A DNA stretch of 64,000 nucleotides from Ascidiella aspersa (taxonomy: Eukaryota), in the NCBI GenBank assembly GCA_963924565.1, contig OZ004613.1:6696001-6760000 (forward strand), read 5' to 3'. This document shows positions 2,351 to 51,831 of the stretch, piece after piece. How positions within the stretch are numbered: the first letter of the stretch is position 1; the number at the start of each line of letters is the position of its first letter. The notes below the pieces were generated by a model. The model had not been told where the DNA came from and did not search any database. It saw nothing but the letters and a program-made list of their open reading frames with translations. Made by a program: the position numbers and the translations under genes.

Positions 2351-3118
2351 CTAATAACCGCCAGTTACACAAAGTTCTGCCCCATTAACGTAAGAGCTTT
2401 CATCGCTTGCCATGAACAAACAAGCATTAGCAACTTCGACAGGCCTTCCACAGCGACCTAGTGGAACCATTTGCTTAAAACCTTCAATGGTTTTACTGTC
2501 AACCAATTGAAGCATAGGCGTTTCGATTGGGCCCGGCATTACAGCATTGCACCTGACACCAAACCTTCCCACCTCAATGCACGTCGTCTTTGTGAAAACA
2601 ATCACTCCGGCTTTAGAAGCAGCGTAAGCAGCGCAATTTTCCATTCCCTTGACTCCCATAACGCTGGCTACGTTGACGATACTTGCCGTGCTGACATCAT
2701 TGCTTTTTCCCAGTTCAAGTCGCAAAAGAAACTCCTTTGTAAAATTGAAGACCCCAGTTAGGTTGACGTCCAATACTTGGTTAAAAGAAGCCGTGGTTGT
2801 TTCGACGATCGGAGAGACAGGCATTACAGCGGCATTATTGACCAGAATATCGCAATTCTGTCCAAATTGGTTCTTTGCAGCAACAATAACCTCAGACGCT
2901 GAATTCTGTTTGGCGACGTCGCACTGAATCATCGCTACTTTGCTATGATATTTAGCGCTAAACTTTTCGTAGACATTTTTGAGATTTTCTTCACTCCAGT
3001 CCACCATCATAACTTTGGCACCTTCGGCCAGAAAGCGTTCGCAAATAGCTTCCCCGATGCCCCCTGCGGCTCCAGTGACAATCGCCACTTTACCGTTCAA
3101 CCTACCAACTTGCGACAT
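2351..3118 (-). CDS. HSD17B8-like: Classical SDR, HSD17B8/FabG-like (SDR-2), 255 aa, NAD-type (Asp40)
   Basis: Complete motif set; ATG (MSQVGR) at 3118; closest paralog of SDR-1. Confidence 0.9.
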   Translation of the reverse strand: MSQVGRLNGKVAIVTGAAGGIGEAICERFLAEGAKVMMVDWSEENLKNVYEKFSAKYHSKVAMIQCDVAKQNSASEVIVAAKNQFGQNCDILVNNAAVMPVSPIVETTTASFNQVLDVNLTGVFNFTKEFLLRLELGKSNDVSTASIVNVASVMGVKGMENCAAYAASKAGVIVFTKTTCIEVGRFGVRCNAVMPGPIETPMLQLVDSKTIEGFKQMVPLGRCGRPVEVANACLFMASDESSYVNGAELCVTGGY

Positions 3119-4613
3119 TTTAAAAACGTGAAACACAAAACCTTAATCACAAAAGAAATATCAAAACACAACATTCAATTATTTAGAGAGCCAAAAGCAA
3201 CATCATTATTTCTAAATTTTGAGGTAATGAACTACACTTTAATGTCTTGGCTTGTCTAGCAGCTTCCTTAAACGCTTTTAGTCCAAACATTATAATATTT
3301 TTTTTTGCAGACTGCAATGTTGCATGTTTTATGTTAATTGTATCTGTTAAATGACACACTATTAAGCTAAACACCCTGATTTATGTAAAACATGATTTGC
3401 AATGCATTAATAGCGTAAAATCAAGATGCACACCAGAGCATACAAAACATTCTGATGCCCTTTCTGCCATGACTTAAAAATGAACCCATTGAATGAAGTA
3501 CACTGCACATATTGCAGAGTGTATTTGACCTTCGCAAGTTTGCATCGGCACCACTATTGACGCGATACGTGGAAAGCAAAAGTAAAAGCGCTAAACGAGC
3601 GCTGCTAAAAAAATATTGGCCACAAGGTTTTTTCATTTAGCTACATATCTACAATACTTCAATTTTGGTTGTTTTTACAAATGCTATTTCCTTTTAAACA
3701 TTGTAGCTTATTTTGCAACACATTTGTCAATAAGCCTCTCTGCATGGGCGACCATTTACTAAGCAACTGTTAAAAAGCGGTACAAAACCAAACAATACCG
3801 ATTGATTTCGTTACAGCGAATTGGGTTTTTTTTTGGATGTTATAGAATTGATCGCTTAACTTTGGGGGCGTTAAGAAGTAAGAAATCATGACCCAATTTA
3901 GTATTTTTTTGTCAGTCGTACTTTTAAGGTCCAAGCCACCATAAAAGCTTCGATCAGCTAAATTAAAAAAATAAAAATCTTAACGACCCTAATGAGCGTG
4001 TTGGCTGACTATACATGACATATTTTACACGCGTCAAGAAAAAATGGCGGAAAGCAGTGAAGTTTAATCCATGCTAATCGTGAACTCTCAGGCACCAACT
4101 ATCTGATTTTTTGTGATTCAATATTAATTTAGGGCGATTTATCTAATTTTGTAATCACATCTCCTAAGGAAACTCTATATGCAGTTTTTCCGGCTAGTAG
4201 AAAGTGGCGTTTGATTAGCGAAGATTGTAAAAGTCTGTCTATGCTGGATCAGCAGAATGCAAAGCCCATCGAAAGTGGTAAAAGTTTTAAAACAGCTATG
4301 CCCTATAAAGTTCTGGCAACGCCGAGTTTTTCGTCTGTCATGCAATGAACATGTGATGTTGAACTTTGGCGGTTTCAATGCTGTTGGTAATCATTAACAT
4401 ACGGCTACCGAATTGGGAGTGAACTATGAGGCCATATGACGTATGGAATATGTGCAATGAGTCAGCCGTTCGCCATTACAAGGCTTGGGAGTATAGGACA
4501 TTGATGATTGATTCCCGTGTAAAGATGAGATCTAAAACATACACTTGGCTATTAAAAACGCGCTGTGTGTTGGGAAACTTAGGAGTCAGGACTTGATTAT
4601 GAATGATTTAACA

Positions 4614-4903
4614 CAGTGGTTGTCAAACTTTTTGGCTTGCGGCACACTATAAAAATCTTTAATATTTCGCGCCACACTTTAAACAGAACAACAATAAAAT
4701 GATTTTAGAATCGACATTTACACAAGCCAAACTATATGTAAATGTCTCAATATTATTAACTTCTAATAATTTGTGTGTTAAGTCTAAAATATTTGTGTGT
4801 ATGCCTATTGGTAATCGCGTAATAATACCCTTTTTTCCAAAATTGCAAAAATTTTCACGGCACACTTGACGATTCTTTGAGGCACACAGTTTGGGAATCA
4901 CTA
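4614..4903. mobile_element. Degenerate non-autonomous hAT-type MITE
   Basis: Ends cagtggttgtcaaact / agtttgggaatcacta, internal (g)cggcacac motifs; flanks atttaaca/atttggta match only partly. Confidence 0.5.
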
Positions 4904-5208
4904 ATTTGGTATGTGTCAACATGTAGCCTCGCTATGTCTTACACTAGACAATCACGATTCTGCTTGTCATGCATTTGCTTTACACATGTCATTCGAGGTT
5001 TTGCCCTGCTACGAACCACAGCAATGAATTCGCGCTCTGTTTGGTAAAATTTCGCTCTATTTACAGTTATCTTAAATGTTTATTTAGGGACAGCTTTGGT
5101 TCTTTCAAAATTATAAGTCGAACTTAAACTGACGGTGTGTTGATAGATTTTTAGCAAAGTCTTAGTTCGTTTTTTTTTTACGACAAGTTTCTGTATTTCA
5201 GATCTAAA

Positions 5209-5961
5209 ATGGCGTTACAGGGTAAATTAGCGATTGTCCATGGAGCCGCAGGGGGCATCGGGAAAGCTACTTGCGAACGCTTTCTGGCCGAAGGCGCAAA
5301 AGTTATGTTGGTGGATTTGAATCCGAAAAGTCTCAAAGATACCTACGAGAAATTGAGTGCAAAACATCAAGGTAAAGTGGCGATGTTTGAATGCGACATA
5401 ACCGTAGAAAATTCGGCTTCCGAAGCTTTTTCAAGTGCGCAGTCCCAGTTAGGACAGAAATGCAGCATTCTGGTCAACTGCGCTGGTATGTTTGACTTCG
5501 ATCACAGAAACAACCCTGGCTTTATTCAATGAAGTAGTGGCCGTCAACCTGAATGCCATCTTCCTTTTCACGAAGGAGTTCCTTCGGCGCCTTGAGCTTG
5601 GAGAGAACAACAACGGAGATGGAGCAAGTATCATAAACCTCGCAAGTATAGCGGCAAAGGATTCAAATATAACGCAAGCTACGCCCCTGCTAAAGCCGGG
5701 GTGATCGCTTTCACGAAGACGACGCACATGGAGGTGGGAAAGTACGGTGTCAGGTGCAATGCTCTTGCGCCCGGTTTGATTTACACCACGATTCTACGCA
5801 ATGTAGACGAGGATTTGCTTGAATAATTAAAGAAAATGGTTCTGATAGGGCGTAAGGGAAAACCCGCCGAAGTTGCTAATGCTTGTTTGTTCCTGGCAAG
5901 CGATGAAAGCTCTTACTTTAATGGAGCTGTACTTCAAATATCTGGTGGTTTACCCGCGTGA
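5209..5961 (+). pseudogene. SDR pseudogene (SDR-3p), full length, Asp40 type
   Basis: Homology moves from frame 1 to frame 2 (~5491) and back to frame 1 (~5658). In-frame TAA at 5824-5826, YAPAK variant motif, normal end SGGLPA-TGA at 5961. Confidence 0.9.
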
Positions 5962-8265: not shown

Positions 8266-8688
8266 GCCTAGCAGGAACATCACCGTTTTGCAATATAGAC
8301 ATCTCTTTAAACGCTTGGTTAAAAGACAATACTTTAAACTTAACTCACTCGTCCATGACATTCAAGGGCGTCAGCAGGTTTTGCTCTATTGGCCGTGGTT
8401 TTGAAAGTACACAAGGCAGGCCTAAGCGCAACACAAGCAGTTACACTGTAAAGGTTTTTCGTCAATACGCTTTAGGATTGCAGGATTTTAAAGAAAGGTT
8501 TAAAATGTCGCAGGTTATTTCGGATAATTCATTTACTTATAACTAACGAGGGTCTCAGCACTTAATGTTTGATGTGAAGCGGTACTTAAACTGCAGTAAC
8601 ATATTATATATATAGACATAATGAAAAGGCACTTATATCGATTGTCATTATTTTGTATACAACACCTGTTTCTTGATTTAGGTTCAAA

Positions 8689-9462
8689 ATGGCGCAAGTT
8701 GGTCGGTTAGACGGTAAAGTGGCGATTGTTACTGGAGCCGCAGGGGGCATCGGGGAAGCTATTTGCGAACGTTTTCTGGCCGAAGGTTGCAAAGTTATGA
8801 TGGTGGGTCGCAATTATGAAAACCTGAAATCTGTCTACGATAAACTCAATGTTAAATATAAAAACCACGTGGCGATGATTCAATGCGATGTATCAGAAGA
8901 GAATTCGGCGTCACAGGTATTTGCAGCTGCTAGCAACCAATTTGGTGAGAATTGCAATGTTCTGGTAAACAATGCCGGTGTTGTACACGTTTCTCCGATC
9001 GTCGAAACAACACTGGCTTCATTCAATCAGGTATTGGACGTCAACCTGATTGGCGTCTTCAATTTTACAAAGGAGTTTCTTCAGCGACTTGAGCTGGGAA
9101 AGAACAAAGATGACCGCAGGGAAAGTATCGTCAACATTTCCAGTGTATTTGGAAGATATGGTTCACATGGTTTCTCCTCTTACGCTGCTTCTAAAGCTGG
9201 AGTTACTGCTTTTACAAAGACGACGTGTCTTGAGGTTGGCAGGTTTGGAGTAAGGTGCAATGCTGTATCGCCATCTACAACCGATACCCCAATGCTGAAT
9301 ATTCTTGACAGCGAAGCACTTGACGCCATCCAAGCAATGATTCCGATGGGTCGCCTTGGAAAGCCGATCGAAGTTGCTAATGCTTGTTTGTTCCTGGCAA
9401 GCGATGAAAGCTCTTACATCAATGGAGCGATCTTAGAAATATCTGGTGGTTTTATGGCGTAA
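8689..9462 (+). CDS. HSD17B8-like: Classical SDR, HSD17B8/FabG-like (SDR-4), 257 aa, NADP-type (Gly40-Arg41)
   Basis: Intact ORF with all motifs; preceded by acceptor-like tcttgatttag|gttcaaaATG. Confidence 0.92.
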   Translation: MAQVGRLDGKVAIVTGAAGGIGEAICERFLAEGCKVMMVGRNYENLKSVYDKLNVKYKNHVAMIQCDVSEENSASQVFAAASNQFGENCNVLVNNAGVVHVSPIVETTLASFNQVLDVNLIGVFNFTKEFLQRLELGKNKDDRRESIVNISSVFGRYGSHGFSSYAASKAGVTAFTKTTCLEVGRFGVRCNAVSPSTTDTPMLNILDSEALDAIQAMIPMGRLGKPIEVANACLFLASDESSYINGAILEISGGFMA

Positions 9463-13585: not shown

Positions 13586-14367
13586 ATGACACAAGTTGGA
13601 AGATTAAACGGTAAAGCGTGCGTTGTCACTGCGGAGCTGCAGGGGGCATCGGGGAAGGTATTTGCGAACGCTTTTTGGCCGAAAGTTGCAAAGTTTTGAT
13701 GGTGGATTTGAATGCTGAAACTCTCAAAGATGCCTACGAGAAGTTGAATGCCAAATATCAAGGCATAGTTGGGATGATTCAATGCGATGTAGCTGAAGAG
13801 CATTCTGTGTCAGAGGTTTTTCTATTGCACATCCTCAGTTTGGACAGAAATGCATGCAACGTTTTAATAAATAATGCCGGATGTCTAACTTTGTCTCCTA
13901 TTGTCGAAAGAACCAAAGTTTCATTTAAACAGGTTTTGGACACCAACCTGATTGGCGTCTTCAATTTTACAAAAGAGTTTCTTTTGCAACTTTATCTCAG
14001 TGAAAACAAGGATGCAACAGGGGCAAGTATCGTTAACCTTGCCAGCATAGCTGCACTGCAAGGATATGCAGATGCTTCGGCCTACGCTGCTTCTAAAGGT
14101 GGAGTGGTAGCCTTTACGAAGACGACATGCATTGAGGTGGGAAGGTTCGGTGTCAGGTGCAATGCAATAGCGCCGGGTCCAATTGATACTGCATTGCTAC
14201 ACAAGGCATGTGACAGTACAGTTCTTGATGCAATCAGGAAAATGATTCCGTTGCGTCGCATAAGAAAGCCAGTCGAAGTTGCCGATGCTTGTTTGTTTCT
14301 GGCAAGCGATGAAAGCTCTTACGTCAGTGGGGCGGTCTTACAAATATCTGGTGGTTATGCAGCGTGA
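13586..14367 (+). pseudogene. SDR probable pseudogene (SDR-5p), Asp40 type
   Basis: ATG at 13586 (MTQVGRLNGK); a 2-nt insertion at 13631-13632 shifts the frame in the TGxxxGxG motif. A -1 lesion (T-run 13817-13821) and a +4 lesion (tgca duplication 13851-13858) compensate each other; the remainder is open with YAASK. Confidence 0.85.
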
Positions 14368-17472: not shown

Positions 17473-17510
17473 ATGTCGCAAGTTGGCATCGGGGAAGCTA
17501 TTTGCGAACG
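17473..17510 (+). pseudogene. SDR 5' fragment (SDR-6f)
   Basis: [13 protein letters not shown] with a 45-nt internal deletion; homology ends at 17510. Confidence 0.85.
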
Positions 17511-18137
17511 TATATATTGTACTCATGTCACTTATAATCTTTTCTAAACGCCCAATTTTCATTGCATGTTATGATATGCAAACAGTAGGCCTATATGCGA
17601 AAAACACTACAGCTGGTCTGACTGGAAAGTTGCTTAAACTCGCACATTTGACGGTTAAATAACTATTTTAAAACGAAAATAAATGTGGCATGTTTAAAAG
17701 CACCTCTAGGCAACAAAGACAAAGGTAACATGCAAGGGCAGCGACATTTGAATGACACGATTCTAGAAACGTGCACGCCGTGCGATGTTTTGACCAAAAT
17801 AATCCTCGTTTTTTTGCTGCATAGCTTTGACTGCCGGCACGCAATGCACAGCTGTTTTAAACGGTCTTCATTCAAGTCTAGTCTCAAAAAGTTTGTTTAG
17901 AAAATGTGATCAGTCGAAACGAGTTTTAGCACTTTAAGTTGTCAACAGGAAGTGGAAACTTTATTATACACGATATGTTGTGAAATACATTCACTCGAGA
18001 CTGCGGTGAGGGACTGCAAGTATAAGCCAAAGTCCGAATAATGGCTAGTCAATAGTTTCGTCTATTCATCTTTTGGGGTAACTTTTGTGCTTCTGGCAAA
18101 CTTGTCGGCAATATGCTTCTGTTTTTTTAGACTTAGA

Positions 18138-18201
18138 ATAGCTTAAGTTGGTAGGCTAAATGGTAAACTGGCTATTGTCACTGGAGCCGCAGGGGGCATC
18201 G
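18138..18201 (+). pseudogene. SDR 5' fragment (SDR-7f)
   Basis: ATG>ATA and CAA>TAA, then [18 protein letters not shown]; truncated before a poly-T run. Confidence 0.85.
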
Positions 18202-19510
18202 CAAATTTTTTTTTTTTGCTGATTTGTTTTTAATTATGTTCGTATCTCACAGTAAACCGTCAAATTAAAATATCGGAATAAAATCGAAAATATCAGTCAT
18301 TCCTATTCTTAAATAATCGCAGTCGTAAATCGATTTGGCCAACAATTACAATCGTGGAAATTAGGTGGGAATTTCCAGTCCTTATGTGCTATTTTTCTTT
18401 CCTATGTAGCGTCAGTTGGTTTTGAATAAAACGGCCAAGTTGATAGTTTCGAGCCAGCCCCACTTAAACCTGTTTGTTTTCAATTTGCTCAAAAAATTGA
18501 ATGCGACAAGTCATTTGGATAAAAAATGAAAAATATCTAGTTGGCAAACGTTTTTCTAACATGAGCTATATTTTAATTAACAAACAACAAAAACGTTGCA
18601 TATAGAGAGTATAATGTTTTACAAGCAGAATTTGGTTAAAACTAATCAAGTTTATCAAAAAATGTTTTACATTTAAATTAATAAGTAAATAGAAATACTT
18701 AAGTCAAGTCAAGTCATTTAAAAACAACGAATTAAGTTCACTTTTATGATTTAAGTCATCACAACACTGCCATATACCAAGATTGAAAGAGCCAAAACGC
18801 ACAATTCAGAAAGAGCTTTGGTTAAGGTTAAATGATAACCCTGCGGTACATTGGCGTGTAGTTTTAAGTACAAGTAACAGCCAATAGCGAACGATGACAG
18901 TTGTGCATAGATTTCACTGATATATATGGCCTTTAAAAGTGTTTTTTGTATTTACACCCATATGCCAGTTAGCAAGATCTACATATTTGCTAACAGAAAT
19001 GCAACGAAAGCTTTTCACTATCTGAAAACAGTTGTTGTGCTACATAAAAACGTACTTGCAAACCGTCAAAGCGCATGGTTAGACTTCCTCCACAAATACC
19101 AAACAGCGGTGATGGTTGTTTTTCAGCTGCTTATTAATAGCTCGTGGCAGTTTCGTTGCACGGAAGTCATGCTTTGTATGCTAACGTAGTTGTTAGCGCT
19201 ACGAACTCGCATGACATTTAGTTGCAAACCGTTTAAGCCAATCGATTTTGGTTAGCTGCGGCAACTTAGCCTTTCGGGTGGGAATATCGGCAATACGATT
19301 TTGGATATCAGAATTTAAAGAACTGGTTTAGGTTTAAAATGTCGCAAGTTATTTTGTACAATTCATTTACTCATGGCCAACAAGGGTCTCATCACTTAAT
19401 GCTTGCCAGGTTGGGGTACTAACCAGCAGCAACATGTTGACTCAGTGGAAAGGCACCTCTTTGGATTGTCATTCTTTTTATGCAACATGTGCTTGTATTT
19501 CAGGTTGATA

Positions 19511-20284
19511 ATGGCGCAAGTTGGTAGGTTAAACGGTAAAGTGGCCATTGTTACTGGAGCCGCAGGGGGCATCGGGGAAGCTATTTGCGAACGCTTTCTG
19601 ACCGAAGGTGCCAAAGTCATGATGGTGGATTTGAATGCTAAAAGTCTTGATAATAAGTACGAGAAATTTGGTGCCAAATATAAAGGCAAAGTGACGAAGT
19701 ATCAATGCGATGTAACTAAAGAAAGTTCTGCCTCTGAGGCTTTTGAGAAATCCGTCTTTGAATTCGGTCAGAATTGCAACGTTCTAGTCAACTGCGCCGG
19801 CATTGCACCTATGTCTTCGATCGTCGAAACAACCCTGGCTTCATTCAATCAGGTATTGGACGTGAACCTAAATAGCGTCTTCATCTTTACAAGAGAATTC
19901 TTAAGGCGACTTGAGCTTTGTGAGAACAAGGATTCAACAGGAGCAAGTATCGTTAACATCTCCAGCATTTCGGCTAAATTGGGATTTTTAGATCACGCAA
20001 GCTACGCTGCCTCTAAAGCTGGAGTGGTGGCCTTTACAAAGACGACGTGCATTGAGGCGGGAAGGTTCGGTGTCAGGTGCAATGCACTCACACCCTCATG
20101 GATCGAAACTCCGCTTCTACAAGATGCTGACCCTGCGATGATTGAAGGATCCATTCCTTTCATTCCATTGGGTCGCATTGGAAAACCCGTCGAAGTTGCT
20201 AACGCTTGTTTGTTTCTGGCAAGCGATGAAAGCTCTTACATCAATGGGGCTATACTTCAAGTATCCGGTGGCGCGATGCCTTAA
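19511..20284 (+). CDS. HSD17B8-like: Classical SDR, HSD17B8/FabG-like (SDR-8), 257 aa, NAD-type (Asp40)
   Basis: Intact motifs; ttgtatttcag|gttgataATG at 19511. Confidence 0.92.
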   Translation: MAQVGRLNGKVAIVTGAAGGIGEAICERFLTEGAKVMMVDLNAKSLDNKYEKFGAKYKGKVTKYQCDVTKESSASEAFEKSVFEFGQNCNVLVNCAGIAPMSSIVETTLASFNQVLDVNLNSVFIFTREFLRRLELCENKDSTGASIVNISSISAKLGFLDHASYAASKAGVVAFTKTTCIEAGRFGVRCNALTPSWIETPLLQDADPAMIEGSIPFIPLGRIGKPVEVANACLFLASDESSYINGAILQVSGGAMP

Positions 20285-20286
20285 AG

Positions 20287-21825: not shown

Positions 21826-22662
21826 TCATGCAAATAAACCACCAGATATTTGGAGTGTCGCTCCATTAACGTAAGAGCTTTCATCGCTTGCCAGGAACAA
21901 ACAAGCATTAGCAACTTCAATCGGCTTTCCAAGGCGCCTCATTGGAATCATCGCCTTTAACGTCTCAAACTTAGCAACTTCTACTTGCTTTCCAAAGCGC
22001 CCCATCGGTATCAATGGCCTGACGGCTTCAAGCTTCACCGGGTCAAAATTGTTTTGGATCAGAGTATCAATTACACCTGGCGTGACAGCATTGCACCTGA
22101 CACCGAACTTTCCTACTTCAATGCAAGTTGTCTTTGTGAAAGCATTCAAGCCGGCTTTAGAAGCAGCGTAGCTGGCATGATCTTCCACTCCGACCTGCCC
22201 AGCTAAACTGGACACATTCACGATACTTGCGCCTGTTGCATCCTTGTTCTTACCAAGCTCTAGTCGCCGAAGAAACTCCTTCGTGAAAGTGAAGACGCCG
22301 AATAGATTGGTGCTTAAGACCTCGTTGAAAGAAGCCAGGCTTGTTTGAACGATTGGAGACAAAGGCGCAACACCAGCGCAGTTTACCAAAACGTTGCAAT
22401 TTTGTCCGAACTGAGAAAGTGTCATTGAAAAAGACTCAGACGCGGATTTTTCCTCAGTTACATCACATTGAACCATGGCGACATTTTCCTTATATGTGAC
22501 ACTAAGCTTGTCGTAGACAGATTGCAGGTTTTCTAAATTCCGACCCACCATCATGACATTGGCACCTTCGGCCAGAAAGCGTTCGCAAATAGCTTCCCCG
22601 ATGCCCCCTGCGGCTCCAGTGACAATCGCCACTTTACCGTTTAACCTACCAACTTCCGACAT
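21826..22662 (-). CDS. HSD17B8-like: Classical SDR (SDR-9), 278 aa including a 21-aa paralog-derived insertion, NADP-type
   Basis: ATG (MSEVGR) at 22662; all motifs present; in-frame 63-nt insertion at 21910-21972. Confidence 0.85.
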   Translation of the reverse strand: MSEVGRLNGKVAIVTGAAGGIGEAICERFLAEGANVMMVGRNLENLQSVYDKLSVTYKENVAMVQCDVTEEKSASESFSMTLSQFGQNCNVLVNCAGVAPLSPIVQTSLASFNEVLSTNLFGVFTFTKEFLRRLELGKNKDATGASIVNVSSLAGQVGVEDHASYAASKAGLNAFTKTTCIEVGKFGVRCNAVTPGVIDTLIQNNFDPVKLEAVRPLIPMGRFGKQVEVAKFETLKAMIPMRRLGKPIEVANACLFLASDESSYVNGATLQISGGLFA

Positions 22663-25124: not shown

Positions 25125-25778
25125 ATGTCGCAAGTTGGCAGGTTACTCGGTAAAGTGGCGATTGTTACTGGAGCCGCAGGGGGCATCGGGGAAGCTATTT
25201 GCGAACGCTTTCTGGCCGAAGGTGCTAAAGTTATGATGGTGGGTCGGAATTTAGAAAACCTGCAATCTGTCTACGAAAAACTTAATGTCATATATAAGGA
25301 AAACGTCGCAATGGTTCAAGGCGATGTAACTCAGGAGAAATCCGCGTCTGAGTCTTTTTCAATCACACTTTCTAAGTTCGGTCAAAATTGTAACGTTTTG
25401 GTAAACTGCGCTGGTGTTGCGCCTTTGTCTCCAGGCGCAAGTATCGTGAATGTGTCCAGTTTAGCTGGGCAGGTCGGAGTGGAAGATCATGCCAGCTACG
25501 CTGCTTCTAAAGCCGGCTTGAATGCTTTCACAAAGACAACTTGCATTGAAGTAGGAAAGTTCGGTGTCAGGTGCAATGCTGTCACGCCAGGTGTAATTGA
25601 TACTCTGATCCAAAACAATTTTGACCCGGTGAAGCTTGAAGCCTTCAAGCAAATGATTCCAATGGGTCGCTTTGGAAAGCAAGTAGAAGTTGCTAATGCT
25701 TGTTTGTTCCTTGCAAGCGATGAAAGCTCTTACATTAATGGAGCGACGCTCCAAATATCTGGTGGTTTATTTGCATAA
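25125..25778 (+). CDS. SDR-10, inverted twin of SDR-9 with an in-frame 120-nt deletion (217 aa; probably catalytically impaired or a pseudogene)
   Basis: ATG at 25125; the junction cca|ggc at 25433/25434 removes IVQTSLAS...KNKDAT (40 aa). The 3' flank 25779-26070 is the reverse complement of ~21505-21825. Confidence 0.7.
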   Translation: MSQVGRLLGKVAIVTGAAGGIGEAICERFLAEGAKVMMVGRNLENLQSVYEKLNVIYKENVAMVQGDVTQEKSASESFSITLSKFGQNCNVLVNCAGVAPLSPGASIVNVSSLAGQVGVEDHASYAASKAGLNAFTKTTCIEVGKFGVRCNAVTPGVIDTLIQNNFDPVKLEAFKQMIPMGRFGKQVEVANACLFLASDESSYINGATLQISGGLFA

Positions 25779-26479: not shown

Positions 26480-26645
26480 AATTTAATTTGAGATTCTTCA
26501 TTTTTCGGCCCGTCAGCCGACTTCGACCCACCATCATGACTTTGGCACCTTCGGCCAGAAAGCGTTCGCAAATAGCTTCCCCGATGCCCCCTGCGGCTCC
26601 AGTGACAATGGCCACTTTACCCTGTAACCGACCAAATTGTTCCAT
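26480..26645 (-). pseudogene. SDR 5' fragment (SDR-11f), Gly-Arg type
   Basis: [41 protein letters not shown], then decays. Its upstream region (26646-27330) is an inverted homolog of the SDR-14/15/16 promoter. Confidence 0.88.
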
Positions 26646-28145: not shown

Positions 28146-28427
28146 ATGTCGCAAGTTGGTAGGTTAAACGGTAAAGTGGCCATTGTCACTGGAGCCGCAG
28201 GGGGCATCGGGGAAGCTATTTGCGAACGCTTTCTGGCCGAAGGTGCCAAAGTAATGATGGTGGACTGGAATCTTGAAAAACTTAATAACACTTACAAAAA
28301 ACTGTTTGCCAAATATCAGAGCAAAATAGCAATGTTTCAATGCGATGTGTCGGATGAGAATGCAGCGAATGAAGCGCTTTCAAAAACGCACTCTCAGTTT
28401 GGAGAACACTGCAATGTTCTAGTAAAT
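28146..28427 (+). pseudogene. SDR 5' half (SDR-12f) interrupted by a hAT transposon, Asp40 type
   Basis: 94 clean codons up to NVLVN, then the TIR cagggttgtccaaact begins at 28428; the 3' half is not found. Confidence 0.9.
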
Positions 28428-32326: not shown

Positions 32327-33100
32327 ATGGCGCAAGTTGGTAGGTTAAACGGTAAAGTGACCGTTGTCACTGGAGCCGCAGGGGGCATCGGGGAAGCTAT
32401 TTGCGAACGCTTTCTGGCCGAAGGTGCCAACGTAATGATGGTGGATTGCCATTTGGAAAATCTCAAAGTTGTTCATGGAAAATTGAATGCCAGTTATGAA
32501 GGTAAAGTGGCGATGATTCGATGCGACGTAACGGAAGAGAATTCGGCTTGTGAGGCGTTCACGGCTGCAAACGAGCAGTTCAAGCAGAATTGTAACGTTT
32601 TGGTTAACTGCGCTGGTATTCCGGGCATGTCTCCAATTGTCGAAGCAAGCCTGGCTTTCTTCAATAAGGTATTAAGCGTCAACCTTAAGGGCGCCTTCAC
32701 TTTCACGAGAGAGTTCTTACGGCGACTTGAGCTTGGAGAGAAGAAGGATACGACAGGTGCCAGTATAGTTAACATCGCCAGCATTGCAGCCAATACAGGA
32801 TTTGAAAATTTATCTGCCTACGGTGCTTCTAAAGCTGGACTGGTCGCTTTCACAAAGACGACGTGCATTGAGGTGGGAAAATACGGTGTCAGGTGCAATG
32901 CGCTAACGCCAGGTGCAATTGACACAGCTTTCATAAGCGATACCCAAAAGGAACAGTTTGAGACGTTAAAGGCGATGATTCCAATGAGGCGCCTTGGAAA
33001 GCCGATTGAAGTTGCTAATGCTTGTTTGTTCCTGGCAAGCGATGAAAGCTCTTACATTAATGGGGCAACACTTCAAGTATCTGGTGGTTCTATGGCGTGA
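32327..33100 (+). CDS. HSD17B8-like: Classical SDR, HSD17B8/FabG-like (SDR-13), 257 aa, NAD-type (Asp40)
   Basis: Intact, YGASK; gttttgcag|ttttataATG. Confidence 0.92.
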   Translation: MAQVGRLNGKVTVVTGAAGGIGEAICERFLAEGANVMMVDCHLENLKVVHGKLNASYEGKVAMIRCDVTEENSACEAFTAANEQFKQNCNVLVNCAGIPGMSPIVEASLAFFNKVLSVNLKGAFTFTREFLRRLELGEKKDTTGASIVNIASIAANTGFENLSAYGASKAGLVAFTKTTCIEVGKYGVRCNALTPGAIDTAFISDTQKEQFETLKAMIPMRRLGKPIEVANACLFLASDESSYINGATLQVSGGSMA

Positions 33101-35786: not shown

Positions 35787-36560
35787 ATGGCACCATTAGG
35801 TAGATTACAAGGTAAAGTGGCGATTGTCACTGGAGCCGCAGGGGGCATCGGGGAAGCTATTTGCGAACGTTTTTTGGCCGAAGATGCCAAAGTCATGATG
35901 CTGGGTCGGAATGAAGAAAATCTCAAAAATGTTTACGAAAAGTTAGTTGCGAAGTACAAAGAAAATGTGGCCATGATTCAATGTGACGTAGCTGAAGAGA
36001 ATTCGGCTTGTGAGGCTTTTACTGCTGTAAGCAAGCAATTCGGAGGGAATTGTAACGTTTTGGTTAACTGCGCTGGTATTCCCGGCATGTCTCCAATCGT
36101 CGAAACAAGCCTGGATTCATTCAATAAGGTATTAAGCGTCAACCTTAAAGGCGCCTTCACTTTCACGAGAGAGTTCTTACGGCGACTTGAGCTTGCTGAG
36201 AACAAGGATTCAACAGGAGCAAGCATAGTTAACATCTCCAGCATTGCAGCCAATACAGGATTTGAAAATTTATCTGCCTACGGTGCTTCTAAAGCTGGAC
36301 TGGTCGCTTTCACAAAGACGACGTGCATTGAGGTGGGAAAATACGGTGTCAGGTGCAATGCGCTAACGCCAGGTGTAATTGACACAGCTTTCATAAGCGA
36401 TACCCAAAAGGAACAGTTTGAGACGTTAAAGGCGATGATTCCAATGAGGCGCATTGGAAAGCCGATTGAAGTTGCTAATGCTTGTTTGTTCCTGGCAAGC
36501 GATGAAAGCTCCTACATTAATGGGGCAACACTTCAAGTATCTGGTGGTTCTATGGCGTGA
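35787..36560 (+). CDS. HSD17B8-like: Classical SDR (SDR-14), 257 aa, hybrid of an SDR-16-like N-terminus and an SDR-13-like C-terminus, NADP-type
   Basis: Intact ORF from MAPLGR; see findings for the mosaic structure. Confidence 0.9.
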   Translation: MAPLGRLQGKVAIVTGAAGGIGEAICERFLAEDAKVMMLGRNEENLKNVYEKLVAKYKENVAMIQCDVAEENSACEAFTAVSKQFGGNCNVLVNCAGIPGMSPIVETSLDSFNKVLSVNLKGAFTFTREFLRRLELAENKDSTGASIVNISSIAANTGFENLSAYGASKAGLVAFTKTTCIEVGKYGVRCNALTPGVIDTAFISDTQKEQFETLKAMIPMRRIGKPIEVANACLFLASDESSYINGATLQVSGGSMA

Positions 36561-36962
36561 ATCATTTAACGAATAAAGCTCCACAGACTGGATTTCTATA
36601 TTTTAGGTTGCCATATTGTTGTTACTAAGCTAATAATTTGACTTGTCGTTAAAATGAATAAATAGCTTCAGAATAGCGACATATTTTAATGGAATAAATG
36701 CCGTGTTGTAAACAAGTCATTTTGAAATGGCTTAAGTCAAAGTCGGGATATTTGTAAAATAACTTAAGTCCAAGTCAAGTCTGTTTGAATAAATACCAAG
36801 TCAAGTCCCAGTTAAGTCATAATTAGAGCAAATCTATTTCAAGTCAAGTCCTTGTCATAAAAATTAAAATTTAATTCTCTACCATTCATGGACAATAATT
36901 CAACTGAAACATAAGAAAAACGCAAAATATATGACAAGCTAATATTTTTACGTACACATATT

Positions 36963-40535: not shown

Positions 40536-41633
40536 CAATTTAGTTATTTTTGCATTATGCTTTTGTGACAACTGCATTTCTGTTCCAAATTTAAAATGGC
40601 ACAGGTTGATAATTACTAATATTTTCATAAAAAAAACTAAATTAAATTTGTTTTGGGACTAAGTAGTGACAGCCCAGCAGACTCTACATCAGGGTTAAGG
40701 AAAGTTGGCCACCAATGCCTACGGCTTGCACACTTTTTCTGTCCTGTCAGCCGATGTGGATATTTTGATTGATAGCTCATTTACCCCCTAAAACGAGAAA
40801 ATTTATCCCCTGGGGTAAATTTACCCCAGGTTAAGAAAGGCTGCTCTACCTGTAGTATAATCCTTACAGGCTCTACGAGTTTACAAAATCTACATGAAGT
40901 ATAAATGTAAGATTCTCAAAATCTATATGTATAAGACATTTTTTCAAATAATCAATATTAATCTAAAAATAACGCGTTGGTGCCTTCTTTTTAAAGATGT
41001 TCTGATTCGCTGAATGTTACATATTTGCGCAACAAGTTCGACCGAAATCGCAAAGTTTCTTAAATCTTATTAGTTTGTTGCGCAAAATGGTTACGTCATC
41101 TTTGAATATTTTAATTTCGCAGATGTTTTAGGGTATTGCAACACATTAAAGGTTTTGTCAAGCATCGATGTACGTAATCATGGCAAAAGTAGGGTAATAC
41201 AAGCGCTCGTTAAAATTTGCGACATATGTAATTGCAAGGCAGTGTAGCGGCGTTTGTACCCCATAAATTCGTGGCTAAACTTTCACTCTTTGCCGTTGTT
41301 TTTCTATTTATGTCACGTTCTCGTTCAACGCTCATATCATGCGCGATCTCGTTCAATAACTAATTACACGATGACGCAGAGTGCAACTGACTGGTCACAC
41401 GTTCAGATTTACAACGAAGGGCAGCCACAAACAGTTATGCAACTCAGAAAAAAAAAGACTCTAAAATAACAGCACAATTGAAGTGACAAAACTTTGTTAG
41501 GATCAGTTGTCAGCGATAAGAATACATGTAAGGAAGTCAGCGCAAGGAGATTGATACAAAAAAATAAATAATACGGTTGTCGCCATAATTGCATATTATT
41601 TTTTAGGCTGCATCTGTGTTCAGTATTTTTAGT

Positions 41634-42407
41634 ATGGCACCATTAGGTAGATTACAAGGTAAAGTGGCCATTGTCACTGGAGCCGCAGGGGGCATCGGGG
41701 AAGCTATTTGCGAACGTTTTTTGGCCGAAGATGCCAAAGTCATGATGCTGGGTCGGAATGAAGAAAATCTCAAAAATGTTTACGAAAAGTTAGTTGCGAA
41801 GTACAAAGAAAACGTGGCCATGATTCAATGTGACGTAGCTGAAGAGAATTCGGCTTGTGAGGCTTTTACTGCTGTAAGCAAGCAATTCGGAGGGAATTGT
41901 AACGTTTTGGTTAACTGCGCTGGTATTCCCGGCATGTCTCCAATCGTCGAAACAAGCCTGGATTCATTCAATAAGGTATTAAGCGTCAACCTTAAAGGCG
42001 CCTTCACTTTCACGAGAGAGTTCTTACGGCGACTTGAGCTTGCTGAGAACAAGGATTCAACAGGAGCAAGTATAGTTAACATCTCCAGCATTGCAGCCAA
42101 TACAGGATTTGAAAATTTATCTGCCTACGGTGCTTCTAAAGCTGGACTGGTCGCTTTCACAAAGACGACGTGCATTGAGGTGGGAAAATACGGTGTCAGG
42201 TGCAATGCGCTAACGCCAGGTGTAATTGACACAGCTTTCATAAGCGATACCCAAAAGGAACAGTTTGAGACGTTAAAGGCGATGATTCCAATGAGGCGCA
42301 TTGGAAAGCCGATTGAAGTTGCTAATGCTTGTTTGTTCCTGGCAAGCGATGAAAGCTCCTACATTAATGGGGCAACACTTCAAGTATCTGGTGGTTCTAT
42401 GGCGTGA
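41634..42407 (+). CDS. HSD17B8-like: Classical SDR (SDR-15), protein identical to SDR-14
   Basis: Identical translation with a few synonymous differences (gcg/gcc, aat/aac, agc/agt). Confidence 0.88.
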   Translation: MAPLGRLQGKVAIVTGAAGGIGEAICERFLAEDAKVMMLGRNEENLKNVYEKLVAKYKENVAMIQCDVAEENSACEAFTAVSKQFGGNCNVLVNCAGIPGMSPIVETSLDSFNKVLSVNLKGAFTFTREFLRRLELAENKDSTGASIVNISSIAANTGFENLSAYGASKAGLVAFTKTTCIEVGKYGVRCNALTPGVIDTAFISDTQKEQFETLKAMIPMRRIGKPIEVANACLFLASDESSYINGATLQVSGGSMA

Positions 42408-42809
42408 ATCATTTAACGAATAAAGCTCCACAGACTGGATTGCTATATTTTAGGTTGCGTTATTGTTGTTACAAAGCTAATAATTTGACTTGTCGTTAAA
42501 ATGAATAAATAGCTTCAGAATAGCGACATATTTTAATGGAATAAATGCCGTGTTGTAAACAAGTCATTTTGAAATGGCATAAGTCAAAGTCGGGATATTT
42601 GTAAAATAACTTAAGTCCAAGTCAAGTCTGTTTGAATAAATACCAAGTCAAGTCCCAGTTAAGTCATAATTAGAGCAAATCTATTTCAAGTCAAGTCCTT
42701 GTCATAAAAATTAAAATTTAATTCTCTACCATTCATGGACAATAATTCAACTGAAACATAAGAAAAACGCAAAATATATGACAAGCTAATATTTTTACGT
42801 ACATATATT

Positions 42810-46275: not shown

Positions 46276-47052
46276 ATGGCACCATTAGGTAGATTACAAG
46301 GTAAAGTGGCCATTGTCACTGGAGCCGCAGGGGGCATCGGGGAAGCTATTTGCGAACGTTTTTTGGCCGAAGATGCCAAAGTCATGATGCTGGGTCGGAA
46401 TGAAGAAAATCTCAAAAATGTTTACGAAAAGTTAGTTGCGAAGTACAAAGAAAATGTGGCCATGATTCGATGCGATGTAGCTGAAGAGAATTCGGCTTGT
46501 GAGGTCTTTACTGCTGTTAAAAAGCAATTCGGACAGAATTGCAATGTTCTGGTTAATAATGCTGCTGTCTTGTCAGTGTCGTCGATCGTTGACACAACCA
46601 TGGATTCATTCAACCAAGCATTGGACGTCAACCTGAACGGCGTCTTTATCTATACAAAGGAATTTCTCAAGCGGCTCAAACTTACCGAGGGTCAAAATGC
46701 AGCAGGCGCAAACATCGTTAACGTCACCAGCATGGCGGGTAGGCTGGGATTCAAAGATTGCTCTGCCTACTCTGCTTCTAAAGGTGGAGTGGATGCTTTC
46801 ACAAAGACGACATGCATTGAGGTGGCAAGGTTCGGTGTCAGGTGCAATGGGGTTTCGCCCTGTGTTATTGATACTCCATTGCTACACCGCTCGTTTAACA
46901 AAGCCTATATCGATGCTGTCAAGCCAATGATTCCGATGGGGCGCTTTGGAAAGCCGGTAGAAGTTGCTAATGCTTGTTTGTTCCTGGCAAGCGATGAAAG
47001 CTCTTACATCGATGGAGCGATCTTAGAAATATCTGGTGGTTTTATGGCCTAA
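46276..47052 (+). CDS. HSD17B8-like: Classical SDR, HSD17B8/FabG-like (SDR-16), 258 aa, NADP-type
   Basis: Intact, YSASK; the first 64 residues are identical to SDR-14/15 and the C-terminal two thirds are distinct. Confidence 0.92.
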   Translation: MAPLGRLQGKVAIVTGAAGGIGEAICERFLAEDAKVMMLGRNEENLKNVYEKLVAKYKENVAMIRCDVAEENSACEVFTAVKKQFGQNCNVLVNNAAVLSVSSIVDTTMDSFNQALDVNLNGVFIYTKEFLKRLKLTEGQNAAGANIVNVTSMAGRLGFKDCSAYSASKGGVDAFTKTTCIEVARFGVRCNGVSPCVIDTPLLHRSFNKAYIDAVKPMIPMGRFGKPVEVANACLFLASDESSYIDGAILEISGGFMA

Positions 47053-48575: not shown

Positions 48576-48700
48576 ATGGCGAAACTTGGTAGATTACACG
48601 GAATTGGGAAAGCTATTTGCGAACGTATTCTAGACGAAGGTTTCAAAGTCATGATGATGAATTTGAATAAAAAAATTTTGGAGGTGTTTTCGAAAAACAT
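48576..48700 (+). pseudogene. Old SDR 5' fragment (SDR-17f)
   Basis: tgtgtttcag|gtttaaaATG, MAKLGRLH-GIGKAICERILDEGFKVMM with a 33-nt deletion; end approximate. Confidence 0.8.
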
Positions 48701-48756
48701 AACAAATCACTTTTGCAAGAGAGTTTCACAGAATTTTTAACACATATGTGTGTGCA

Positions 48757-49862: not shown

Positions 49863-50431
49863 TGTTGGCGTTCGCGCCTCACGGCCACACAGAATAATAA
49901 ATACCAATGTTTAACTGGAGTGCGGCATCCGGTCAGTGACAGGCCGTCAAGCAGTGAATAAGATATGGCGCAACAATAACACTGATCATGTTTCAAAGCG
50001 AATTTATTTCGGTCATGGATTTATGGTACAACTTTAGTCCTTTAAAGCTTAATAAATACAATTTTTGCTTATATTTTAGTGTGTCAGACTCACTTGTTTA
50101 CAACTAGCCAAATTTCTAAAAGAAAAAATAAGCGTTTTTATTATTTAAAATGTCAAACGAAACTCCAGAAATAAAAAACTCTTCTCGAACGAATAAACCC
50201 ACAGGTCTGTAACATATAATATTGTAATGTTTATGAAAATCTAGCATCAGCTTTAAACATTTCTTCCTTGAGATATTTTAAAATATGTGCCAACTGTTTT
50301 TAACTATAGTCCCGAGAAGGCTAGAACACTTTTGTATAAATGTAACAATCAAAACAAATAGGAAAATATCACTTATACCTATACTTTAGCCTGCCTAAAA
50401 GTTAAAAGGTATCGTTTTTTTCGTGAGATTA

Positions 50432-50635
50432 TCAGGGTCGTAATGACTTAAGTCGATGACTTGAATTAAGTGCACTTAGGTTACTGTTTTCGAATGGCTT
50501 TACGTTTAGTCGTTTACCCAATTTTAATATCTTGAATTTAAAGACTAGAATTGCTCGTATTATGACTTTACTGGGACTTGACTTGTTATTTATTCAAAAT
50601 GACTTGACTTGGACTTAAGTCATTTCAAAATGAAT
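50432..50635. repeat. Dispersed gacttgactt/aagtcaagtc-rich element (related copies at ~18500-18770, 33243-33395, 36700-36855 and 42550-42700)
   Basis: Clustered aagtc pentamers and cagtgttgt-like ends; probably a TIR-element family. Confidence 0.5.
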
Positions 50636-51057
50636 AGTTAAAAGTAATCGTTTTCGACTCGTTTTTCTCGTCGCCAACGAGTAATTCGACAGGTTCAACA
50701 GCCATACTTCGTAACCATAGTTATATTAAGTCTAAATATGACGTAATTTTTTAGCAATTTCTCGATTTTTGTTTAGATCGGTAATCGATTTTCCAGGGTA
50801 AATTTGTCAAAAGTTTTAAGGGTAGCCGCAATATATTACTAACCGACACTATAGCTTTGTATTTTGGAAAAACTTAACTGATACGTTAGATTAAAAAAAG
50901 GAAAGAAACCATTTGATGTTGGGTTTAAGTGAAAGATTAACTTTATTTTACGTGGTAGTAAAAGTCACGTTCGGAACAACCCCTAGCGTATTGTAATAAA
51001 CTATTCCGGCGTATAAAAGCATACAGCGCTGTCTGTCAACATTCCTTTGTGAAAACG

Positions 51058-51831
51058 TCACCTCATTAAACCGCCAGATATGTCAAGGATGGCACCGTTT
51101 ATGTAAGAGCTTTCATCGCTCGCCAGGAACAAACAAGCATTAGCAACTTCGGCCGGCTTACCGAAGCGCCTCATTGGAATATGTGGCTTTGCTTTATCAG
51201 GAAATGCACGGCCGTAGGGACTCAGCATTGTAGTGTCGATTAAACCTGGGGTGGCTGCATTGCACCTGACACCGAACTTTCCCACCTCAATGCACGTCGT
51301 TTTCGTTAAGGCATTTACACCAGCTTTGGAAGCAGCGTAGGACGAACCTTTTAGCAATCCAACATTTCCCGCTAAGCTTGAAACATTAACGATACTTGCT
51401 CCAGCTGCATCCTTGTTTTTACCAAGCTCAAGTCTCTGAAGAAACTCCCTTGTATAAGTGAAGGCGCCAAACAGATTGATGCCTATGACATGATTAAAAG
51501 AAGCCAGGGTTGTGTCGACGATCGGCGATAAAGGTAGGACACCTGCATTGTTTACTAGAACATTGCATTTCTGACCGAATCGGTTGCTAATAGCACTAAA
51601 AGCCTCACGCGCGGAACTCTCTTTAGATACGTCGGATTGAATCATCGCCACGTTGCCTTTAAATGTTTCACTGAGTTTTTTGAAGGCAGAATTTAGATTT
51701 TCTTGATTCCGACCCACCATCATTACTTTGGAACCTTCGGCCAGAAAGCGTTCGCAAATAGCTTCCCCGATGCCCCCTGCGGCTCCAGTGACAATAGCCA
51801 CTTTACCTTTTAACCTACCAACTTGCGCCAT
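51058..51831 (-). CDS. HSD17B8-like: Classical SDR, HSD17B8/FabG-like (SDR-18), 257 aa, NADP-type
   Basis: Intact motifs; ATG (MAQVGR) at 51831. Confidence 0.92.
   Translation of the reverse strand: MAQVGRLKGKVAIVTGAAGGIGEAICERFLAEGSKVMMVGRNQENLNSAFKKLSETFKGNVAMIQSDVSKESSAREAFSAISNRFGQKCNVLVNNAGVLPLSPIVDTTLASFNHVIGINLFGAFTYTREFLQRLELGKNKDAAGASIVNVSSLAGNVGLLKGSSYAASKAGVNALTKTTCIEVGKFGVRCNAATPGLIDTTMLSPYGRAFPDKAKPHIPMRRFGKPAEVANACLFLASDESSYINGAILDISGGLMR

What the first reader, a model, noticed from the sequence alone, without database searches (positions are those of the whole stretch)
3037..51789. A 41-nt DNA island invariant across 12 diverged paralogs, including all synonymous sites
Seen: actggagccgcagggggcatcggggaagctatttgcgaacg is identical in SDR-2, 4, 8, 9, 10, 11f, 12f, 13, 14, 15, 16 and 18 (one change in SDR-1), on both strands and even in dead fragments. 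It contains eight fourfold-degenerate codons, yet the sequence ~35 nt downstream is highly divergent. Two other islands behave similarly (ggtgtcaggtgcaatg; gaagttgctaatgcttgtttgttcctggcaagcgatgaaagctcttac). Protein constraint alone does not fix silent sites. Inference: frequent short-tract gene conversion, with the islands acting as homology anchors that bracket exchangeable variable cassettes, or a nucleotide-level element such as a small-RNA target or protein-binding site.
Basis: partly seen in the sequence, partly recalled or inferred. Interest (0 to 1): 0.8.

Follow-up and report, generated by a model that had tools for sequence, protein, structure and literature searches.

The report
Gene-conversion islands in SDR gene array
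In a cluster of some thirty copies of a dehydrogenase gene in what an earlier scan note calls a sea squirt, the stretches coding for the most conserved protein motifs are kept almost letter-for-letter alike, silent positions included, most likely because the copies keep overwriting one another there; this is a clear example of a known process.

Summary
The 41-mer occurs 12 times exactly and once with one change in the window (0 expected). In the 308-Mb genome it occurs 31 times with at most 3 changes, always inside copies or fragments of one short-chain dehydrogenase (SDR) family whose coding sequence has no introns. It is the core of a block of about 95 nt (CDS nt 24-118).

Two further blocks behave the same way. 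Silent-site diversity is about 0.15 in the blocks and 0.41 at equally protein-conserved codons elsewhere. Most flanks cannot be aligned and silent sites in the variable parts are near saturation, so the copies are old.

Codon preference, RNA structure, overlapping reading frames, a complementary locus elsewhere and polishing artefacts all found no support.

The family is a recombinational patchwork. It shows long identical tracts inside variable regions, strongly supported conflicting segment trees and chimeric genes. Block homogeneity is also greater inside the main cluster than for dispersed copies.

Best reading (about 0.65): non-allelic gene conversion and unequal crossing-over, surviving only where long protein-invariant runs keep identity high. 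A nucleotide-level element is not excluded (about 0.15).

This is a new member of a known kind, of moderate interest.

The parts
698..1465 (-). SDR copy 1, intact (255 aa)
   Evidence: Open reading frame and tblastn match. Island 1 at 1383-1423 with one silent change (GCC to GCA). Island 2 at 892-907. Island 3 at 737-784.
2351..3118 (-). SDR copy 2, intact
   Evidence: Islands at 3036-3076, 2545-2560 and 2390-2437.
5214..5961 (+). SDR copy 3, pseudogene (frame broken, no proper start)
   Evidence: Island 1 region has 8 of 75 changes. Islands 2 and 3 are exact at 5746-5761 and 5869-5916.
8689..9462 (+). SDR copy 4, intact
   Evidence: Islands at 8731-8771, 9247-9262 (2 mismatches) and 9370-9417.
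13586..14367 (+). SDR copy 5, N-terminus disrupted (no ATG), probable pseudogene
   Evidence: Island 1 region has 8 of 75 changes. Islands 2 and 3 at 14149-14164 and 14275-14322.
17485..17511 (+). Orphan fragment holding the 3' half of island 1 (CDS nt 58-84)
18138..18205 (+). Orphan 5' fragment (CDS nt 1-68) holding the 5' half of island 1
19511..20284 (+). SDR copy 8, intact
   Evidence: Islands at 19553-19593, 20069-20084 and 20192-20239.
21826..22662 (-). SDR copy 9, intact reading frame with a 21-aa internal duplication whose two halves resemble different paralogs (chimera, junction at the start of island 3)
   Evidence: Protein alignment. Islands at 22580-22620, 22089-22104 and 21871-21918.
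25125..25778 (+). SDR copy 10, in-frame 40-aa deletion
   Evidence: Islands at 25167-25207, 25563-25578 and 25686-25733.
26519..26645 (-). 5' fragment (CDS nt 1-127), inverted relative to copy 10; island 1 exact at 26563-26603
   Evidence: It forms an inverted repeat with 25122-25246.
28146..28427 (+). 5' fragment (CDS nt 1-282) followed by a hAT transposase remnant; island 1 exact at 28188-28228
32327..33100 (+). SDR copy 13, intact
   Evidence: Islands at 32369-32409, 32885-32900 and 33008-33055.
35787..36560 (+). SDR copy 14, intact; lies in one unit of a 5.85-kb tandem duplication
   Evidence: Islands at 35829-35869, 36345-36360 and 36468-36515.
41634..42407 (+). SDR copy 15, protein identical to copy 14 (second unit of the duplication)
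   Evidence: Islands at 41676-41716, 42192-42207 and 42315-42362.
46276..47052 (+). SDR copy 16, intact chimera. About 2.2 kb upstream plus CDS nt 1-193 match the copy-14 unit; the rest is related to other paralogs. Transcribed on the sense strand.
   Evidence: Islands at 46318-46358, 46834-46849 and 46960-47007.
48600..48696 (+). Decayed fragment (CDS nt 58-155)
51058..51831 (-). SDR copy 18, intact
   Evidence: Islands at 51749-51789, 51258-51273 and 51103-51150.

Best explanation
The islands are the parts of an old, large SDR gene family that still evolve in concert. The family has about 23 intact copies and many broken ones. Most lie in C7:6.38-6.75 Mb, and a few are dispersed.

Shown: the paralogs exchange sequence by non-allelic homologous recombination, that is, ectopic gene conversion with surviving tracts of roughly 40-160 nt, plus unequal crossing-over that makes chimeric genes.

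Inferred: exchange needs local identity, and converted copies survive only where they do not overwrite functionally diverged residues. It therefore persists only across the longest protein-invariant runs. These are the Rossmann glycine loop (codons 9-33), the FTKTTCIEVGRFGVRCN block and the [16 protein letters not shown] block. There the silent sites are carried along and stay homogeneous, while the regions between have escaped and diverged to near saturation.

Inferred: the 3' edge of island 1 coincides with a residue switch at codons 40-41 (Asp in 12 copies, Gly-Arg in 10). In classical SDRs this switch decides NAD versus NADP preference, so selection against converting it would set that boundary.

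A weak extra contribution of direct selection on silent sites cannot be separated from this.
For: Age of the copies. Mean identity of the flanks falls to 0.35-0.4 within about 100 nt of the CDS, and silent sites in variable parts have pS 0.5-0.7. The islands are therefore not left over from recent duplication.

Recombination. Twenty of 231 pairs share identical runs with permutation p<0.0005, against about 0.1 expected. Several runs lie wholly in variable sequence, and some involve copies on another chromosome. Nearest neighbours change along the gene. Segment trees conflict with UFboot 87-100; for example L034 groups with L035/L036 in one segment and with L040 in another, and L045 groups with L042 and then with L038/L043. 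Copy 16 is a chimera and copy 9 carries a chimeric internal duplication.

Graded pattern. Silent heterozygosity at conserved codons falls as the amino-acid identity of neighbouring codons rises (rho -0.58, p 1e-10). The longest invariant runs are the most homogeneous.

Proximity. Island pS is 0.21 within the main cluster, 0.29 between cluster and dispersed copies, and 0.36 among dispersed copies, at equal variable-region pS of 0.55-0.58 (permutation p 0.017).

Lineage specificity. Another animal's homologue (51% identical) and two bacterial-like contigs encode the identical 16-aa island-3 motif. They share only 8, 4 and 6 of its 16 third positions.

Pseudogenes. Silent island sites are as conserved in pseudogenes (10.8% off consensus) as in intact copies (10.9%), while first and second codon positions are relaxed.

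Literature. The dependence of ectopic conversion on identity, and its homogenising of silent sites in families under purifying selection, are established (PMC3924832).
Against: Island distances still correlate with variable-region distances (Mantel r 0.46; pS rho 0.33). Homogenisation is therefore incomplete, and a uniformly slower rate in the islands would fit this as well.

Two silent sites (CDS nt 36 and 42) lie inside the protein-invariant block within 10 nt of the 41-mer, yet are polymorphic in all combinations. Tract-wise homogenisation does not predict this simply.

Pseudogenes have accumulated private changes in islands at the same rate as at other formerly constrained sites (4.5% against 5.0%). 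There is no sign of ongoing correction on that time scale.

The GC3 excess expected from biased conversion is small (0.47 against 0.43). The PHI-like test is only modestly significant (p 0.02). The proximity effect weakens to p 0.066 without the outlier L054.

No close relative's genome was available for the classical species-specific test.
Confidence: 0.65

Rival explanations
1. The islands are nucleotide-level functional elements held by purifying selection on the RNA or DNA itself. Examples would be a family-wide small-RNA (siRNA or piRNA) target or an RNA- or DNA-binding-protein site that co-regulates all paralogs, placed on motif-coding sequence because that sequence is stable.
For: Silent sites are far more conserved than at equally protein-conserved codons elsewhere. 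Island divergence scales with overall divergence like a slower clock. Dispersed copies on other chromosomes keep the island with 1-3 changes. A 125-nt inverted repeat covering island 1 (25122-25246 and 26524-26648, 90% complementary) could in principle give double-stranded RNA.
Against: No locus outside the SDR family matches either half of the 41-mer with up to 2 mismatches in 308 Mb. There is no excess RNA structure, no Rfam family and almost no antisense reads at the two gene copies that were laid. Three separate blocks would each need their own element. Conservation is graded with the length of the protein-invariant run rather than forming a block of 21-30 nt. Homogeneity depends on genomic proximity. 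Silent island sites are not relaxed in pseudogenes (limited power).
Confidence: 0.15
2. The copies are young, so the islands show their true age, and the variable regions were driven apart by diversifying selection or local hypermutation.
For: pN/pS reaches 0.7-0.8 in the substrate-loop region, codons 200-220.
Against: Silent sites in the variable regions are also near saturation (pS 0.5-0.7). Flanking non-coding DNA cannot be aligned for most pairs. Positive selection does not raise silent divergence.
Confidence: 0.04
3. Selection on codon choice or translation (accuracy at conserved residues, or a 5' ramp) fixes the silent sites.
For: Silent conservation tracks amino-acid conservation.
Against: Only 49% of the fixed island codons are the family's preferred codon. 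The rarest glycine codon, GGG (10% usage), is fixed at two positions, next to fixed GGA, GGC and GGT. Islands 2 and 3 lie far from the start codon.
Confidence: 0.03
4. Assembly or polishing artefact that homogenised repeated segments.
For: None positive. It is a generic risk for multi-copy sequence.
Against: Polymorphic silent sites immediately flank the 41-mer and are kept in the assembly. Raw Illumina reads of another sample pile up 4-10 fold in the bins that hold islands 1 and 3, with no alternative letters listed there. Contigs from an independent study break at the islands, as expected for true repeats of 31 nt or more (the variant table was truncated).
Confidence: 0.02

Closest known systems
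[quoted passage not shown]
   Same: Old duplicates with diverged flanks whose coding sequence, silent sites included, stays homogeneous. Conversion depends on sequence identity and interacts with purifying selection.
   Different: Here about 30 copies are involved, not 2-4. Only three short blocks (about 50-95 nt) of each gene remain homogeneous, and the rest has escaped and diverged to near saturation.
Mosaic gene conversion with persistent islands of divergence (GOT1 paralogs of the copepod Tigriopus californicus, PMC3728101; only title and abstract seen)
   Same: Conversion among paralogs gives novel combinations, while selected regions resist homogenisation.
   Different: The picture is inverted. 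In this family divergence is the rule and homogeneity forms the islands. The family is also much larger and partly dispersed over chromosomes.
Small-RNA targeting of motif-coding sequence in multigene families (plant miR482/2118 on the P-loop of NLR genes; from my own knowledge, not checked here)
   Same: A conserved protein motif of a large family coincides with nucleotide-level conservation that could allow family-wide regulation.
   Different: No complementary locus was found. There are three blocks rather than one site of about 22 nt. The organism is an animal (a tunicate, according to an earlier unchecked scan note). No small-RNA data were available.
Programmed cassette conversion systems (chicken immunoglobulin pseudo-V donors, Borrelia vlsE, trypanosome VSG; from my own knowledge)
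   Same: Conserved segments flank variable segments, and pseudogene-like fragments are present in the array.
   Different: There are many independently intact genes, each with its own start and upstream acceptor-like motif. No single expression site is seen. The fragments are 5' pieces rather than variable cassettes. Tract ends do not sit at the conserved segments.

Membership tests
Concerted evolution by ectopic gene conversion / non-allelic recombination | Segments of paralogs far more alike than neighbouring neutral sequence allows | tested here: met
   Island pS is 0.14-0.25, against 0.5-0.7 elsewhere. Flanks are about 0.35-0.4 identical.
Concerted evolution by ectopic gene conversion / non-allelic recombination | Shared identical tracts longer than chance (GENECONV-type test) | tested here: met
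   Twenty of 231 pairs reach p<0.0005. Several tracts lie wholly in variable sequence.
Concerted evolution by ectopic gene conversion / non-allelic recombination | Conflicting phylogenies between gene segments | tested here: met
   Conflicting clades with UFboot 87-100 between four segments. The nearest-neighbour mosaic agrees.
Concerted evolution by ectopic gene conversion / non-allelic recombination | Paralogs within a species more alike than orthologues between species (species-specific fixed silent states) | tested here: inconclusive
   Only distant outgroups were available. With an identical 16-aa motif they share 4-8 of 16 third positions. The divergence is too deep to exclude slow constraint. 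Close relatives are withheld or absent.
Concerted evolution by ectopic gene conversion / non-allelic recombination | Homogeneity stronger between physically close copies | tested here: met
   Island pS is 0.21 within the cluster, 0.29 between cluster and dispersed copies, and 0.36 among dispersed copies, at equal variable-region pS. Permutation p is 0.017, or 0.066 without L054.
Concerted evolution by ectopic gene conversion / non-allelic recombination | GC enrichment at converted silent sites (biased conversion) | tested here: inconclusive
   GC3 is 0.47 in the islands and 0.43 elsewhere.
Classical short-chain dehydrogenase/reductase (Pfam adh_short_C2 / adh_short) | Profile match above threshold, with the TGxxxGIG, NNAG-type and YxxxK motifs | tested here: met
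   PF13561 at 8.5e-62 and PF00106 at 4.2e-52. NCBIfam NF005559 (glucose 1-dehydrogenase subfamily) scores 221 bits against a cut-off of 215. The motifs are visible in the alignment.
Small-RNA target site shared by a gene family | A locus elsewhere that encodes a complementary small RNA | tested here: not met
   All matches to either half of the 41-mer (up to 2 mismatches, both strands, 308 Mb) lie in SDR copies or fragments. Small RNAs made from the family itself were not testable.
Small-RNA target site shared by a gene family | Small RNAs mapping to the site | not testable with these tools
   No small-RNA library was offered.
Programmed cassette-conversion diversification | One expressed acceptor gene fed by silent donor cassettes | tested here: not met
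   About 23 intact full-length genes exist. The fragments are 5' pieces. RNA reads cover copy 16, and reads that carry a paralogue's letters come from at least one further copy.

The most novel reading that the evidence does not exclude
The islands are not only a by-product of conversion but are themselves used. One version is a family-wide nucleotide-level regulatory handle, for example endogenous siRNAs or piRNAs made from inverted SDR fragments such as 25122-25246 / 26524-26648, acting on all paralogs at the Rossmann-motif island. The other version is recombination anchors kept by selection, because shuffling cofactor-switch and substrate-loop segments creates new enzyme combinations.
Probability: 0.1. 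Interest if true: 0.7.

Novelty: new member of a known kind. Interest (0 to 1): 0.35.

Why it matters
This is a clean natural example of partial escape from concerted evolution. Within one 774-nt gene, three short blocks remain locked together across about 30 copies, on at least four assembly contigs, while the rest has diverged to saturation.

It gives a usable system for measuring ectopic conversion tract lengths, their dependence on identity and the filtering of conversion by selection in a chordate. It also flags a large, undescribed, bacterial-like SDR expansion with an apparent NAD/NADP switch dimorphism.

It does not point to a new mechanism.

Tried and rejected
Codon preference. Only 49% of the fixed island codons are the preferred ones, and rare GGG is fixed twice.

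Local RNA structure. Mean z-scores against synonymous-codon shuffles are between -0.5 and +0.7 in all windows and about -0.4 to +0.2 over the islands.

Known RNA families. Rfam at gathering thresholds gave nothing in the window.

Overlapping or antisense reading frames. No consistently long alternative frame crosses the islands. The antisense frames were not put in register between copies, so this check is rough.

Complementary small-RNA locus. None was found.

Recent duplication. Rejected by the unalignable flanks and the saturated silent sites.

Pseudogene test. It was meant to separate selection from conversion but is inconclusive. Private changes are 4.5% in islands and 5.0% at other invariant sites. 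Silent island sites are equal in dead and live copies, but the power is low.

Four-gamete / PHI-like test. Only modest (p 0.02). Incompatibility is already 40% for sites less than 15 nt apart, so homoplasy is heavy.

Cross-species test. The word search found only a 51% relative. A degenerate pattern for the island-1 peptide found nothing in metagenome contigs. The island-3 peptide pattern found two GC-rich bacterial-like contigs. 'Organism B' in the read search is 0-2.6% different at low depth, too close to be informative.

Literature. Searches found no description of this SDR expansion.


Full report
**What is there**

The window (G000 contig C7:6,696,001-6,760,000) holds 18 copies or fragments of one gene. 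Ten have an undisturbed full-length frame. One carries an in-frame duplication, one an in-frame deletion, two are broken, and five are 5' or internal fragments.

The product is a classical short-chain dehydrogenase/reductase of 255-258 aa. It matches PF13561 at 8.5e-62 and the NCBIfam glucose 1-dehydrogenase subfamily above its cut-off. The closest solved structures are bacterial FabG-type reductases. The coding sequence has no introns.

Genome-wide the family has about 23 intact full-length copies and many broken ones. Copies are 57-100% identical in protein to the copy-14 query. Most lie in C7:6.38-6.75 Mb. There is a small second group at C7:9.01-9.04 Mb, and single copies or pseudogenes lie on C1, C3 and C6. 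The next most similar SDRs in the genome are only 31-34% identical.

An earlier scan note calls the genome a tunicate (unchecked).

The 41-mer occurs 12 times exactly and once with one change, on both strands, with none expected by chance. The two other islands occur 13 times each. In the whole genome the 41-mer has 31 matches with up to 3 changes, 18 of them exact, and every one lies in an SDR copy or fragment.

Among amino-acid-invariant degenerate codons of the window copies, the DNA-invariant ones are strongly clustered: 21 runs against 40.6 expected, p about 2e-5. None of the 29 such codons between codon 36 and codon 165 is invariant.

In 22 intact copies genome-wide:
- silent heterozygosity at conserved codons is 0.15 in the three blocks and 0.41 elsewhere;
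- windowed pS is 0.14-0.25 in the blocks and 0.5-0.7 elsewhere.

The nucleotide alignment shows that the 41-mer is just the stretch between two polymorphic silent sites (CDS nt 42 and 84). These sit inside a homogeneous block of about 95 nt (nt 24-118) that ends abruptly.

**It is not an artefact**

Illumina reads from another sample pile up 4-10 fold in the bins that hold islands 1 and 3. No alternative letters were listed inside any island, although that table was truncated. Short contigs from an independent study stop at the islands, as repeats of 31 nt or more make them do.

**Simple explanations that fail**

- The copies are old. Mean flank identity drops to 0.35-0.4 within about 100 nt of the CDS, and variable-region silent sites are near saturation. 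Some subfamilies do share flanks.
- Codon preference fails. Only half of the fixed codons are preferred, and four different glycine codons are each fixed at their own positions.
- No unusual RNA folding, no Rfam family and no consistently long alternative reading frame cover the islands.
- No locus outside the family is complementary or identical to either half of the 41-mer.
- RNA-seq shows sense-strand transcription of copy 16 and almost no antisense signal.

**Evidence for recombination among the copies**

A GENECONV-style run test gives 20 of 231 pairs with p<0.0005, where about 0.1 is expected. Tracts lying wholly in variable sequence include:
- L031/L036, nt 128-185;
- L034/L035, nt 246-304;
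- L040/L052, nt 274-323;
- L043/L044, nt 411-451.

Some of these pairs are on different chromosomes. Each copy's nearest relative changes along the gene.

Maximum-likelihood trees of four segments conflict with UFboot 87-100. Copy 16 shares about 2.2 kb of upstream sequence and CDS nt 1-193 with the copy-14 duplication unit, and then switches to other relatives. Copy 9 carries a 21-aa duplication whose halves resemble different paralogs, joined at the start of island 3.

**Why the islands sit where they do**

Silent heterozygosity of a conserved codon falls as the amino-acid identity of its neighbours rises (rho -0.58). The three longest protein-invariant runs (22, 16 and 10+6 codons) are the three islands, whereas short motifs such as NNAG and YxxxK are not homogenised.

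This graded pattern is what identity-dependent conversion predicts once it is filtered by selection against overwriting diverged residues. The principle is stated in PMC3924832.

The 3' edge of island 1 falls on codons 40-41, where 12 copies have Asp and 10 have Gly-Arg. By established SDR knowledge this position decides NAD versus NADP preference. The link to the boundary is my inference.

Island silent divergence is lower within the main cluster (0.21) than between cluster and dispersed copies (0.29) or among dispersed copies (0.36), at equal variable-region divergence (p 0.017; 0.066 without one outlier). A fixed functional element would not depend on position in this way.

The identical island-3 peptide occurs in a 51%-identical gene of another animal and in two bacterial-like contigs. 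They share only 8, 4 and 6 of its 16 third positions. The protein motif alone therefore does not fix the silent letters. The homogeneity belongs to this lineage.

**What remains open**

Island distances still track overall relatedness. Two silent sites inside the invariant block are polymorphic in all combinations. Pseudogenes have decayed as fast inside islands as at other formerly constrained sites.

Conversion is therefore occasional rather than rapid, and a uniformly slower clock from direct selection on the nucleotides is not excluded. Silent island sites are no more variable in pseudogenes than in live genes (10.8% against 10.9%), while first and second positions are relaxed. That favours a DNA-level process, but the power is low.

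No close relative's genome could be reached for the classical test of concerted evolution.

**Verdict**

- The picture of anchors bracketing cassettes is not supported, because tracts start and stop in variable sequence.
- The regulatory-element alternative is unsupported but alive at about 0.15.

The phenomenon is partial, motif-restricted concerted evolution in a tandem family. It belongs to a known kind (PMC3924832; PMC3728101, abstract only) and is unusually sharp and large here.

Noticed in passing
window, all SDR copies; L061, L062: The family may have a bacterial origin. Its coding sequence has no introns. The best outside matches after two eukaryote-like contigs (51% and 42% identity) are bacterial and archaeal SDRs at about 40%, while the genome's own next SDRs are only 31-34% identical. 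The 51% relative sits on a contig next to an F-box/ApaG (FBXO3-like) gene, so it comes from another eukaryote.
   Followed up: partly
8-12 nt upstream of the ATG of most copies, e.g. window 8670-8688, 19490-19510, 32305-32326: A polypyrimidine run followed by AG lies just before the start codon in most copies. It looks like a 3' splice acceptor, either for a 5'-UTR intron or for spliced-leader trans-splicing.
   Followed up: no
codons 40-41 of each copy (CDS nt 118-123): There is a sharp dimorphism right at the end of island 1: Asp-X in 12 intact copies and Gly-Arg in 10. In classical SDRs this position predicts NAD(H) versus NADP(H) preference. The two types are scattered over the mosaic.
   Followed up: partly
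window 28777-30700 (-): Broken hAT-type transposase (dimerisation domain, 1.2e-6, plus a weak zinc-finger hit) about 350 nt downstream of the truncated SDR fragment 28146-28427. It probably caused the truncation.
   Followed up: partly
window 50434-50630: Very high-copy short repeat. Read depth is about 2,600 against about 10 nearby. Many reads show internal 'goes back' joints, that is, variable tandem sub-repeats. It is also present in RNA reads.
   Followed up: no
window 33473-39155 and 39296-45000: Recent tandem duplication of a unit of about 5.85 kb (97.9% identity). It carries two SDR genes with identical proteins. A third, older unit supplies the upstream part of copy 16.
   Followed up: partly
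window 25122-25246 and 26524-26648: Inverted repeat of 125 nt, 90% complementary, formed by the 5' end of copy 10 and an inverted 5' fragment. It covers island 1 and could form double-stranded RNA if transcribed through.
   Followed up: no
window 17485-17511 and 18138-18205: Two orphan pieces about 630 nt apart together cover CDS nt 1-84, roughly one half of island 1 each. The first piece joins CDS nt 3-12 directly to nt 58-84. They are remnants of a rearranged copy.
   Followed up: partly
window 46850-46851: All 12-13 RNA reads show CT where the DNA has GG; 0 of 6 DNA reads show it. This changes the Gly codon into the Ala codon that most paralogs carry. The likely cause is cross-mapping of reads from a more highly expressed paralog, not editing.
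   Followed up: no
whole window: CpG observed/expected is about 0.98 in the window and 0.91-0.99 in the genes, so there is no sign of germline CpG depletion. The 41-mer keeps four CpGs in all copies.
   Followed up: no
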